A stretch of 63,533 nucleotides of DNA, the filler included, from Octopus bimaculoides (lineage: Eukaryota): the NCBI RefSeq assembly GCF_001194135.2. It is 6 parts of 6 records of this genome, joined end to end, with 100 filler letters (N's around TTAATTAATTAA, not from the genome) between each part and the next. Parts side by side here need not be neighbours in the genome. Positions count along the whole stretch, not along the records: positions 1 to 19,672 come from NC_069001.1; 5 more parts are not named here. One strand, 5' to 3'. The notes under the pieces are model-generated. The model was given only the letters and a program-made list of their open reading frames with translations, made no database searches and was not told the origin of the DNA. The translations under genes were made by a program, and so were the position numbers. This document shows positions 3 through 1,364 of this stretch, one piece after another (positions within the stretch are counted from its first letter, which is position 1; every line of letters begins with the position of its first letter).

Positions 3-1364
3 TGAGGCGACCTCTGAGTCAGAATGGGTGCCTTCTAGAGGAGAAGGCAAGTTAAAGTTGAATACATGCCCCCCTTCAGGTACAGAACAAAGAGGTGATC
101 GAGGTGACAGCAAATGCTTCGAATAAAAAGGCGGTGACCTGATGTAAGAAGAAGGAGATAGAGTAAAAGGTTCAGGTGGAGGGGGGCAGACAATTTCTGA
201 TATTGTCATTGGAGGGCCTTTTGTGGGGGATGTCTCGTATGTCCGACTTGACAGATCGAGGGGTTCACATTGAAGTCCGCTGGCTAGTGATGTGTTCGAA
301 GATTGTGGCTGGCCAACAGTTGAAGCCAGTGAGGTTTGGTTAGAGTTGATATCAGCAGTTGAAGAGATGCTTTGGTTTGGTTCGTCTTGAGGATTTTCAG
401 CAGGCATAAAGACATCATTGTCCTTTGTGTCGTCTTCCTTCAGATCCATCTGACAAACACTGCTATCGTCCTCAATACTCGACAGATAGCGAGCCTGAAG
501 GATCTTTTTGTAACTACCGTGACGAACTAAAGGTTTCTCGATTCCTCGATTGCCTTCGTCCTCACACCGCCACTGACCACTCGACTCTGTCCGATTGGGG
601 GACCTGTCGGAGTCAGACGACCGAGTTTCAAGGTTTGTACATTCCGAAGTGCTGATTCGTAGCATTTTGGGGGATTTCTCTGAGGATACAGACTCATCCA
701 ATTTAAGTTTGGACGGCGACTGTAGACACTGGTTCTGATGCTCTTCAAGATCCTGTTCCTTGGCAGGCGATGGCTCTCGACTGCTGGTGCCGCCACCACT
801 GTCTTCAGACACATCACTCACATCCGAATAAGTGAAACTGTGGAGGTAACGCAACGGGGACGCAAGGGGAGATTTTGATTTATAGTTGGGACTTAGGTTT
901 TTGCTCGACCCCTGCTGGGAGTCTAATAACTGTGGCTTTTGGCCCCCAGGGGCATCTTGCCCTTCTAACAACAGTTTTCTTCCTTTCCAAGGTCGAAACC
1001 ACGATAGATCAGGATGATACTCAAGGTTTGGAGGTGGTTGTTGTCTGTAAAGCCCGCGGGTGATTTTAGGTTTTAGAATGTGACTCGTGGAATTGGCTTT
1101 GGAATAATGTTGAGTTTCATGTTCTGTCTTCTGCAGGTTATTGCTACTGTGCACTTCAGTAGTTGCACCAGTGTTAGAAGAGTTATTACTGTTGTGCATC
1201 TCAATGGTGGCACCGGTATTAGGTGAGTTGCAGCTGCTGCCAGCACTGAGGTCTGATCTCTGTTCAGTTTCTTGGCATTTCATCGCCACTAGTGCTGTGG
1301 ACGAGCCAGCGAAGACTTGGCTACCCACATACTCCCCACCGCTCTGGCCCATGTTCCCTAACAT
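3..1364 (-). CDS. First coding exon (3'-partial, runs off window start) of an unidentified Ser/Pro-rich protein, probably a transcriptional repressor
   Basis: Hand translation gives 454 codons with no stop: MLGNMGQSGGEYVGSQVFAG...YHPDLSWFRPWKGRK...SEDSGGGTSS...QCEPLDLSSRTYETSP...FNFNLPSPLEGTHSDSEVASP. An in-frame stop lies upstream at 1425-1427. Start context is accATG at 1364, with an alternative aacATGg at 1352. The region is free of repeats and more GC-rich than its flank. Confidence 0.85.
   Translation of the reverse strand, partial: MLGNMGQSGGEYVGSQVFAGSSTALVAMKCQETEQRSDLSAGSSCNSPNTGATIEMHNSNNSSNTGATTEVHSSNNLQKTEHETQHYSKANSTSHILKPKITRGLYRQQPPPNLEYHPDLSWFRPWKGRKLLLEGQDAPGGQKPQLLDSQQGSSKNLSPNYKSKSPLASPLRYLHSFTYSDVSDVSEDSGGGTSSREPSPAKEQDLEEHQNQCLQSPSKLKLDESVSSEKSPKMLRISTSECTNLETRSSDSDRSPNRTESSGQWRCEDEGNRGIEKPLVRHGSYKKILQARYLSSIEDDSSVCQMDLKEDDTKDNDVFMPAENPQDEPNQSISSTADINSNQTSLASTVGQPQSSNTSLASGLQCEPLDLSSRTYETSPTKGPPMTISEIVCPPPPEPFTLSPSSYIRSPPFYSKHLLSPRSPLCSVPEGGHVFNFNLPSPLEGTHSDSEVAS

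What the first reader, a model, noticed from the sequence alone, without database searches (positions are those of the whole stretch)
249..1001. Groucho-type (W)FRPW and CtBP-type PLDLS motifs in one disordered N-terminus
Seen: WFRPW at aa 122-126 (987-1001), PLDLSSR at aa 368-374 (PLDLS at 249-263), DSGGGT at aa 188-193 (786-803), and many SP sites. Established: FRPW is the Groucho-binding motif of Drosophila Huckebein and a WRPW variant; PxDLS binds CtBP; DSGxx[ST] is the beta-TrCP phosphodegron pattern; Brinker and Hairless are repressors that recruit both Groucho and CtBP. Inference: a possibly uncharacterised lophotrochozoan dual-corepressor factor with regulated turnover. Short motifs can arise by chance, so conservation is the test.
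Basis: partly seen in the sequence, partly recalled or inferred. Interest (0 to 1): 0.7.

Follow-up and report, generated by a model that had tools for sequence, protein, structure and literature searches.

The report
Octopus zinc-finger repressor, conserved CtBP motif
The stretch encodes the disordered front half of an octopus zinc-finger gene regulator: its PLDLS (CtBP-type) motif is kept in relatives from molluscs to insects and is probably functional, its WFRPW (Groucho-type) motif was found only in octopuses and is unproven, and its supposed degradation signal is probably chance.

Summary
That frame runs off the piece's edge.

The frame is the first 454 codons of a 908-residue protein with four C2H2 zinc fingers. 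It is complete in Octopus vulgaris, at 98% identity. The protein belongs to a family found across protostomes. Its insect members are auto-named inconsistently, several as klumpfuss (klu), a WT1/EGR-like Drosophila repressor.

- **PLDLS:** a conserved island. 191 of 220 family members carry P[LVIME]DL[ST]. It lies in predicted disorder and is usually followed by K/R. CtBP recruitment is well supported as an inference.
- **WFRPW:** occurs only in four near-identical Octopus sequences. It sits in a stretch with no detectable homologue elsewhere. Chance expectation is about 2-8 in 10,000 per protein, so it is notable but not validated by conservation.
- **DSGGGT:** only the D and S belong to a conserved serine-rich block (SEDSxSSRExSP). 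The G's and T are not conserved, and chance expectation is 5-11%.

Verdict: partly supported. This is a new member of a known kind, a CtBP-motif zinc-finger repressor, with a possible lineage-specific Groucho motif.

The parts
1..1364 (-). Coding sequence for aa 1-454 of a C2H2 zinc-finger transcription factor. The ATG is at 1364..1362. The frame continues past base 1, so the zinc fingers lie outside the piece.
   Evidence: open frame. P0058 (908 aa, O. vulgaris) is 98% identical over these 454 aa and continues into four zinc fingers; P0122 and P0124 equal the window's translation and stop at the same place; dN/dS against O. vulgaris is 0.14.
987..1001 (-). WFRPW (aa 122-126), a Groucho/TLE-type [WF]RPW tetrapeptide found only in Octopus.
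   Evidence: coordinates; chance 0.019-0.075% per protein; absent from all 216 non-Octopus family members; predicted disordered.
960..1076 (-). aa 97-135, LKPKITRGLYRQQPPPNLEYHPDLSWFRPWKGRKLLLEG. This is the longest stretch invariant among four Octopus sequences within the otherwise variable aa 5-180. The part before WFRPW aligns loosely with a bivalve block (...VIRxPYNxSAPSLL) and a gastropod block (...FxFPD[MV]).
   Evidence: 39-residue invariant run, permutation P = 0.06; alignment view. Weak evidence only.
765..827 (-). aa 180-200, SDVSDVSEDSGGGTSSREPSP: a conserved serine-rich acidic block (family consensus SEDSxSSRExSPF/Y).
   Evidence: E187, S189, S195, E197, S199, P200 are nearly invariant. 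D 82% and S 92% conserved, but G 0%, G 5%, G 15%, T 0%.
465..512 (-). aa 285-300, YKKILQARYLSSIEDD: the only predicted ordered element of the N-terminal half, a helix. Family consensus is PGxFKKxLHARYxSSL.
   Evidence: helix 285-300, pLDDT 71-78. K286, L289, R292 invariant in 42 sequences.
405..416 (-). aa 317-320, DVFM: a short conserved acidic-hydrophobic island (consensus DxxDVFME).
243..266 (-). aa 367-374, EPLDLSSR: a CtBP-type PxDLS motif (PLDLS = 249..263) followed by a basic residue.
   Evidence: coordinates; 79-95% identity per residue among 39 non-Octopus orthologues; 191 of 220 family members have P[LVIME]DL[ST], 151 of those 191 have K/R within 3 residues after it, and the median distance to finger 2 is 155 aa; disordered.
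12..98 (-). aa 423-451, SPLCSVPEGGHVFNFNLPSPLEGTHSDSE: the most strongly conserved non-finger block of the family. Its function is unknown.
   Evidence: this block produced the first homology hits, and P424-E430, F435, F437, S448, D449 are nearly invariant.
1425..1427 (-). In-frame TAG 21 codons upstream of the ATG. It bounds the reading frame.
1544..1565 (-). Candidate 3' splice site (T-rich tract followed by CAG|G). It would make 1365..1544 a 5' untranslated leader of this exon. Not verified.
   Evidence: sequence only, no transcript data.

Best explanation
The window holds the first 454 codons of the Octopus orthologue of a protostome-wide sequence-specific repressor.

Shown:
- The full protein is 908 aa in O. 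vulgaris and is encoded in one uninterrupted frame.
- It has a long, intrinsically disordered N-terminal half followed by four C2H2 fingers: one isolated finger and three tandem fingers.
- The recognition helices of the three tandem fingers are RSDMLTR, RSDHLNT and RRDMITR, which are EGR/WT1-like.
- The N-terminal half carries short conserved islands.

Inferred:
- From the Zif268 recognition code, the fingers should bind a GNG-TGG-GNG site.
- Insect members of the family are annotated as klumpfuss (klu), a WT1-like Drosophila repressor, so this is probably the mollusc Klu-family gene.
- The N-terminal half works as a string of short docking motifs. EPLDLSSR is an ancient CtBP-docking site, so the protein most likely represses transcription by bringing CtBP to its DNA targets.
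- The serine-rich block and the many SP sites are probably phosphorylation sites of unknown effect, not a beta-TrCP degron.

Unresolved:
- WFRPW was found only in Octopus. It may add Groucho/TLE recruitment in that lineage, or it may be without function.
For: - Identity and architecture.
- Single-frame gene.
- Family breadth (molluscs, annelid, nemertean, brachiopod, bryozoan, insects, barnacle).
- Names: klu or klumpfuss for P0162, P0176, P0226.
- Klu is described as having four fingers and being distantly related to EGR/WT1 (PMC2889900). It is treated as a repressor, and a Klu finger-domain fusion to the Engrailed repressor domain reproduces the full-length Klu phenotype (PMC6739418).
- PLDLS conservation: 191 of 220 members, 79-95% per-residue identity, K/R following in 151 of 191.
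- Disorder around the motifs, and confident fingers as a positive control.
- Purifying selection on the N-terminal half (dN/dS 0.14).
Against: - No binding data of any kind exist for this protein.
- Orthology to D. melanogaster klu rests on database names, which are inconsistent. The same orthogroup is also called Cf2, EGR1, ZNF853 and snail. No D. melanogaster sequence could be fetched for a reciprocal test.
- No held paper links Klumpfuss to CtBP.
- The Mytilus lineage has lost the PLDLS, so the motif is not indispensable.
- The fingers themselves are outside the window.
Confidence: 0.75

Rival explanations
1. The protein is a dual-corepressor factor: WFRPW docks the WD40 domain of Groucho/TLE and PLDLS docks CtBP (as in Brinker, Hairless and Hairy), and turnover is controlled through a DSGxxT beta-TrCP phosphodegron.
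For: - Both corepressor motifs are present in predicted disorder.
- [WF]RPW is rare by chance (0.019-0.075%).
- It lies in the longest Octopus-invariant run of the variable N-terminus (P = 0.06).
- FRPW of Huckebein is cited as required for Groucho interaction (PMC6547707 citing Goldstein 1999).
- A review states that Drosophila Klu interacts with Groucho (PMC10912439 citing Kaspar 2008).
Against: - WFRPW is absent from every non-Octopus family member, and no eh1-type motif replaces it.
- The Octopus sequences are too similar for their agreement to mean much (coding dS 0.06).
- The G and T positions of DSGGGT are not conserved, and the pattern is expected in 5-11% of shuffles.
- Motif-based Groucho predictions have failed before. 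The FKPY of Znf703 was dispensable for Groucho binding.
Confidence: 0.15
2. WFRPW is a lineage-specific sequence with no corepressor function. It arose by drift in a fast-evolving low-complexity N-terminus, and only the deeply conserved islands (PLDLS, the helix, the SPLCSVPEGG block) are functional.
For: - aa 1-180 has no detectable homologue outside Octopus in an exhaustive HMMER search of 1.84 billion representatives.
- It evolves faster than the rest: dN/dS 0.24 against 0.06, and 17.7% variable sites in aa 5-100.
- Per-residue conservation of WFRPW is 0-8%.
- Across a whole proteome, several chance [WF]RPW occurrences are expected. This is my own estimate from the per-protein rate.
Against: - The motif sits in a 39-residue Octopus-invariant stretch, not in the variable part (P = 0.06).
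- It is in a repressor of a family with a reported Groucho link.
- Two of the only three tryptophans in the 454 aa are in this pentapeptide.
Confidence: 0.55
3. The conserved PLDLS is kept for a reason other than CtBP, such as another partner or a structural role.
For: No binding test exists, and no paper links Klumpfuss to CtBP. Mytilus proteins do without it.
Against: The motif matches the canonical PxDLS core exactly in 178 members. It is in disorder, usually followed by K/R, and sits in a DNA-binding repressor family. This is the textbook context for CtBP docking (established knowledge: E1A, Knirps, Kruppel, Snail, ZEB, KLF3/8/12).
Confidence: 0.1

Closest known systems
Drosophila Klumpfuss (Klu), a WT1/EGR-like four-finger repressor
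   Same: Four C2H2 fingers, with three EGR/WT1-like tandem fingers after a divergent first one. Insect proteins of the same orthogroup carry the klu symbol or klumpfuss name. Klu is treated as a repressor and is reported to interact with Groucho.
   Different: Outside the fingers, only short islands are shared between molluscs and insects (PLDLS, a YLHxxY-type helix, HSDSD). Orthology to the D. melanogaster gene itself was not tested. No held paper reports a CtBP link for Klu. WFRPW is absent from the insect members.
Drosophila Huckebein (FRPW-dependent Groucho recruitment)
   Same: An internal FRPW tetrapeptide in a zinc-finger repressor (for the Huckebein motif).
   Different: Huckebein is described as an Sp1/Egr-like factor with three fingers (my knowledge, not tested), so it is not an orthologue. 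The octopus motif is untested and not conserved.
Brinker, Hairless and Hairy (repressors that recruit both Groucho and CtBP)
   Same: A Groucho-type and a CtBP-type short motif in one disordered region of a DNA-targeted repressor.
   Different: The DNA-binding or targeting domains are unrelated. In those proteins both motifs are experimentally validated (established knowledge). Here only the CtBP motif has evolutionary support.
PxDLS zinc-finger repressors (Kruppel, Snail, Knirps, ZEB/Zfh-1, KLF3/8/12)
   Same: A C2H2 (or other) DNA-binding domain plus a PxDLS docking site in a disordered region. This is the mechanism proposed here.
   Different: They belong to different finger families. The similarity is one of mechanism, not of descent.
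EGR1/Zif268 and WT1 zinc fingers
   Same: Fingers 2-4 align over their whole length with EGR1 and WT1 fingers in the PDB (E about 1e-27 to 1e-28). The recognition helices RSDxLTR / RSDHLxT are of the same type.
   Different: There is an extra, separated N-terminal finger. The last finger is CPxCPYAACRRDMITRH, unlike EGR. The N-terminal regions show no similarity.

Membership tests
Klumpfuss-like (WT1/EGR-related) four-finger C2H2 factors | Four C2H2 fingers, with the last three tandem and EGR/WT1-like | tested here: met
   Seen in the full-length orthologue P0058, which is 98% identical to the window over aa 1-454. The PDB search aligns fingers 2-4 with WT1 and EGR1. The fingers lie outside the window itself.
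Klumpfuss-like (WT1/EGR-related) four-finger C2H2 factors | Reciprocal-best-hit orthology with D. melanogaster klu | not testable with these tools
The only support is indirect: the names klu or klumpfuss on P0162, P0176 and P0226, among other inconsistent names.
CtBP-recruiting repressors (PxDLS class) | A P-x-D-L-S core in an accessible, disordered region | tested here: met
   PLDLS at aa 368-372. Most of aa 329-432 has pLDDT below 50.
CtBP-recruiting repressors (PxDLS class) | Motif conserved among orthologues | tested here: met
   191 of 220 family members, from molluscs to insects. Per-residue identity is 79-95%.
CtBP-recruiting repressors (PxDLS class) | Motif-dependent physical binding to CtBP and CtBP-dependent repression | not testable with these tools
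   Needs pull-down, two-hybrid and reporter assays.
Groucho/TLE-recruiting repressors (WRPW class) | A [WF]RPW tetrapeptide in an accessible region | tested here: met
   WFRPW at aa 122-126. pLDDT is about 40 there.
Groucho/TLE-recruiting repressors (WRPW class) | Motif conserved among orthologues | tested here: not met
   Present only in four Octopus sequences at least 95% identical to one another. Identity is 0-8% in 39 other orthologues, and no [WFY]RP[WY] or eh1 motif occurs elsewhere in the family. Intermediate-distance cephalopods were not available.
Groucho/TLE-recruiting repressors (WRPW class) | Binding to the TLE WD40 domain | not testable with these tools
   Needs experiment or complex modelling with a TLE sequence.
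beta-TrCP phosphodegron (DSGxx[ST]) | Pattern present and conserved | tested here: not met
   The pattern is present, but G190-G192 and T193 are 0-15% conserved. It is expected by chance in 5.5-11% of shuffles.
Drosophila chorion factor CF2 | Consistent annotation of orthologues as Cf2 | tested here: not met
   Only a few mosquito proteins carry this name. Close orthologues are called EGR1, ZNF853, snail or klumpfuss. The name looks like automatic best-hit naming.

The most novel reading that the evidence does not exclude
Octopods gained a new WRPW-class Groucho/TLE docking site right next to an older conserved island, in a Klumpfuss-family repressor that has used CtBP since before molluscs and insects diverged. 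That would turn a single-corepressor factor into a dual-corepressor one: a datable gain of a short linear motif that rewires a conserved transcription factor in cephalopods. A by-product is that the whole Klu family, including the fly gene, would be predicted to repress through CtBP, which no held paper reports.
Probability: 0.25. Interest if true: 0.5.

Novelty: new member of a known kind. Interest (0 to 1): 0.3.

Why it matters
The result assigns an unannotated octopus gene, truncated in this assembly, to a conserved protostome repressor family. It also maps the short conserved islands of that family's disordered half.

The most useful outcome is a testable prediction: Klumpfuss-type repressors, including the well-studied fly gene, carry an ancient PLDLS and should recruit CtBP. 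I found no paper making that link. The octopus-only WFRPW is a candidate example of corepressor rewiring by motif gain, but at present it is only a candidate.

Tried and rejected
- **Pfam on the 454 aa:** no family, even at E = 10.
- **Word-indexed homology search with the window protein:** only two hits, both through aa 365-454.
- **Exhaustive HMMER search of 1.84 billion representatives:** seven hits, none covering aa 1-180 except P0121. P0121 is a protein with four copies of one repeat plus a kinesin-type motor. It matches aa 88-139 at 37% identity, with the score inflated by the four copies. It has SW-SFRG where the octopus has SWFRPWKG. Rejected as chance.
- **Six-frame regex for [WF]RPW in 10 kb upstream of two gastropod orthologues:** nothing.
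- **JGI metagenome scan for closer relatives:** nothing.
- **The name 'chorion factor Cf2' for the insect relatives:** rejected as unreliable.
- **PDB sequence search:** only generic or EGR/WT1/CTCF-type finger matches, no closer solved relative.
- **Literature searches:** CF2+CtBP, klumpfuss+CtBP, klumpfuss+PxDLS and the accession SRR29346471 gave no paper connecting this family to CtBP and no identification of the source of P0046.
- **An upstream coding exon of the bivalve type (MRSLND...):** not found in the window.
- **Rest of the window (1400-19672):** only microsatellites, low-complexity DNA and nine N gaps, with no further gene.

Full report
**Observation**

The minus strand of the window has one long open frame. 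It runs from an ATG at 1364 to base 1, where it is cut by the edge of the piece. An in-frame TAG lies 21 codons upstream of the ATG.

- WFRPW at aa 122-126 (987..1001)
- DSGGGT at aa 188-193 (786..803)
- PLDLS at aa 368-372 (249..263)
- FNLPSPLEG at aa 437-445 (30..56)

There are 14 SP dipeptides against 6.7 expected from composition.

In 200,000 composition-preserving shuffles:

| Pattern | Shuffles containing it |
|---|---|
| [WF]RPW | 0.019% (454 aa), 0.075% (908 aa) |
| P.DLS | 2.9-4.8% |
| DSG..[ST] | 5.5-11% |

**What the gene is**

Pfam finds nothing in the 454 residues. The first homology search returned two proteins that match only aa 365-454 and continue into C2H2 fingers. Searching with one of them gave a large family. 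It includes P0058, a 908-residue protein that is 98% identical to the window over all 454 residues.

P0058 is encoded in one uninterrupted frame on OX597834.1 of assembly GCA_951406725.2, the Octopus vulgaris reference genome. The window differs from that locus at 27 of 1362 coding bases and 9 of 454 residues. Identity falls to 78-90% further upstream. So the window comes from another Octopus species.

Two database proteins (P0122, P0124) are identical to the window's translation and stop at the same residue. The gene model is therefore truncated in that assembly, and the window itself contains nine N gaps.

The full protein has one isolated C2H2 finger and three tandem fingers at about aa 538-653. 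The recognition helices of the tandem fingers are RSDMLTR, RSDHLNT and RRDMITR. These fingers align along their length with WT1 and EGR1 fingers in the PDB. By the Zif268 recognition code this predicts a GNG-TGG-GNG site; that is my inference.

**The family**

Using two finger signatures, 220 of the 239 fetched proteins belong to the family. They come from gastropods, bivalves, an annelid, a nemertean, a brachiopod, a bryozoan, many insects and a barnacle.

Database names for the insect members are inconsistent: Cf2, EGR1, ZNF853, snail, ZNF768. Three carry klumpfuss or the gene symbol klu. Klumpfuss is described as a four-finger relative of EGR/WT1. It is treated as a repressor, and a fusion of its finger domain to the Engrailed repressor domain reproduces the full-length Klu phenotype. 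A review says it interacts with Groucho; the primary paper is not held.

I could not fetch the D. melanogaster sequence. Membership in the Klu orthogroup is therefore probable, not shown.

**Conservation test**

A MAFFT alignment of 19 mollusc orthologues, and then of 42 family members, shows clear islands in an otherwise unalignable N-terminal half:
- SEDSxSSRExSP (window aa 180-200)
- FKKxLHxRYLSSL (aa 285-298)
- DVFM (aa 317-320)
- (E/Q)PLDL(S/T) (aa 364-375)
- SPLCSVPEGGxIFNFNxPSPxEGxHSDxE, running on into SPSPMSP..FTFPPR (aa 417-472)

Per-residue identity of 39 non-Octopus orthologues to the octopus residue:

| Motif | Identity to the octopus residue |
|---|---|
| PLDLS | 92, 87, 95, 90, 79% |
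| WFRPW | 0, 3, 3, 8, 0% |
| DSGGGT | 82, 92, 0, 5, 15, 0% |

Across the 220 members, 191 have P[LVIME]DL[ST] (178 have exactly PLDLS). Of those 191, 151 have K or R within three residues after it. Only the four Octopus sequences have [WFY]RP[WY]. No convincing eh1 motif was found: the relaxed pattern hit once, in P0099. The Mytilus lineage has lost the PLDLS.

**The WFRPW region**

An exhaustive HMMER search of 1.84 billion representatives found no homologue of aa 1-180 outside Octopus. The one apparent hit is a repeat-inflated chance match. A JGI metagenome scan added nothing.

Among four Octopus sequences there are 31 variable sites in aa 5-454. Of these, 17 fall in aa 5-100 and one in aa 101-140. 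WFRPW lies in a 39-residue invariant run (aa 97-135), but a run that long arises by chance with P = 0.06.

dN/dS against O. vulgaris is 0.24 for aa 1-180 and 0.06 for aa 181-454, based on only 27 differences.

The residues just before WFRPW (PPPNLEYHPDL) align loosely with a bivalve block (SAPSLL) and a gastropod block (FxFPD[MV]). The motif may therefore have arisen beside an older island. That alignment is weak.

**Structure**

AlphaFold2 on P0058 with the 42-sequence alignment gives confident fingers (block means 74-94). Nearly all of aa 1-532 has pLDDT below 50, apart from one helix at aa 285-300 (pLDDT 71-78) and a few scattered residues. That helix is the conserved FKKxLHxRYL island. WFRPW and PLDLS both sit in predicted disorder, as docking motifs should.

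**Mechanism**

Shown:
- The protein is a zinc-finger protein of a conserved family.
- It has a disordered N-terminal half under purifying selection.
- That half carries a deeply conserved PLDLS.

Inferred, from established knowledge of PxDLS repressors such as E1A, Knirps, Kruppel, Snail, ZEB and KLF3/8/12: the PLDLS docks CtBP, and the protein represses genes near EGR/WT1-like sites.

Unresolved: whether WFRPW docks Groucho/TLE in octopuses.
- For: FRPW of Huckebein is cited as required for Groucho interaction, and fly Klu is reported to interact with Groucho.
- Against: the motif is not conserved. The same paper notes that a predicted Groucho motif (FKPY of Znf703) proved dispensable for Groucho binding.

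The beta-TrCP degron reading is not supported. Only the D and S belong to the conserved block, and the pattern is common by chance.

**Novelty and verdict**

This is a new member of a known kind: a C2H2 repressor with a CtBP motif. The CtBP half and the terminal conserved block pass. The Groucho half and the degron do not pass the conservation test.

The one point of wider interest is the prediction that the Klumpfuss family as a whole uses CtBP. I found no paper making that link.

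Noticed in passing
window 1137..1220 (minus strand; aa 49-76): A tandem duplication of a 13-residue unit in the fast-evolving N-terminus: NTGATIEMHNSNN, then SS, then NTGATTEVHSSNN. Several of the between-species substitutions fall here.
   Followed up: partly
window 465..512 (minus strand; aa 285-300): The only predicted ordered element of the N-terminal half is a helix on the conserved island FKKxLHxRYLSSL (K286, L289, R292 invariant in 42 sequences). Insects have a similar (N)FE(R/H)Y(L/F)H(S/T)KYL. 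Its partner is unknown; it may be a docking helix for another cofactor.
   Followed up: partly
window 12..98 (minus strand; aa 423-451) and beyond the edge: SPLCSVPEGGxIFNFNxPSPxEGxHSDxE followed by SPSPMSP..FTFPPR is the best conserved non-finger block in molluscs. No known motif or domain matches it.
   Followed up: partly
window base 1 (edge); proteins P0122 and P0124: Database gene models identical to the window stop at exactly the window's edge (453 and 454 aa), while O. vulgaris has 908 aa. The gene is truncated by an assembly break in this genome, and its annotation lacks the zinc fingers.
   Followed up: yes
window 1400..19672: The 18 kb upstream holds no other credible gene. It contains nine N gaps (46-558 bases), long AG/GT/AC/TA microsatellites, an (ATA)n run and a 64-base tandem repeat at 8624..8762. 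Identity to the O. vulgaris locus falls from 94% to about 78-90% and then becomes patchy.
   Followed up: partly
proteins P0034, P0036, P0040, P0042 and P0062-P0070 (Mytilus): Mytilid orthologues have lost the PLDLS. Mytilus also has a set of short (417-537 aa) paralogues of this gene, which suggests a lineage-specific expansion.
   Followed up: no
proteins P0003-P0005 and P0012-P0020 (gastropods); L001 about 9341-9442, L003 about 5089-5178: Gastropods share a conserved SPRF[IV]FPDM / KQLFVFPDV motif in the far N-terminal region. It aligns loosely with the octopus EYHPDL just before WFRPW. In the two metagenome-derived gastropod loci it lies 0.6 kb and 4.8 kb upstream of the called frame. The upstream part of the gene is therefore outside those prokaryote-style gene calls and may be a separate exon.
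   Followed up: partly
proteins P0114, P0162, P0176, P0226 (Hemiptera, Coleoptera): Insect members have RRRSHSDSDL(PV)WFE. The HSDSD part resembles the mollusc EGxHSDSD block, but it lies before the PLDLS in insects and after it in molluscs.
   Followed up: no
window 1544..1565 (minus strand): A T-rich tract followed by CAG|G looks like a 3' splice site about 180 bases upstream of the ATG, suggesting a spliced 5' leader. The O. vulgaris annotation has a separate 91-residue gene model ending 65 bases upstream of the start codon (L004 1..9936), which might be mis-split leader exons.
   Followed up: no
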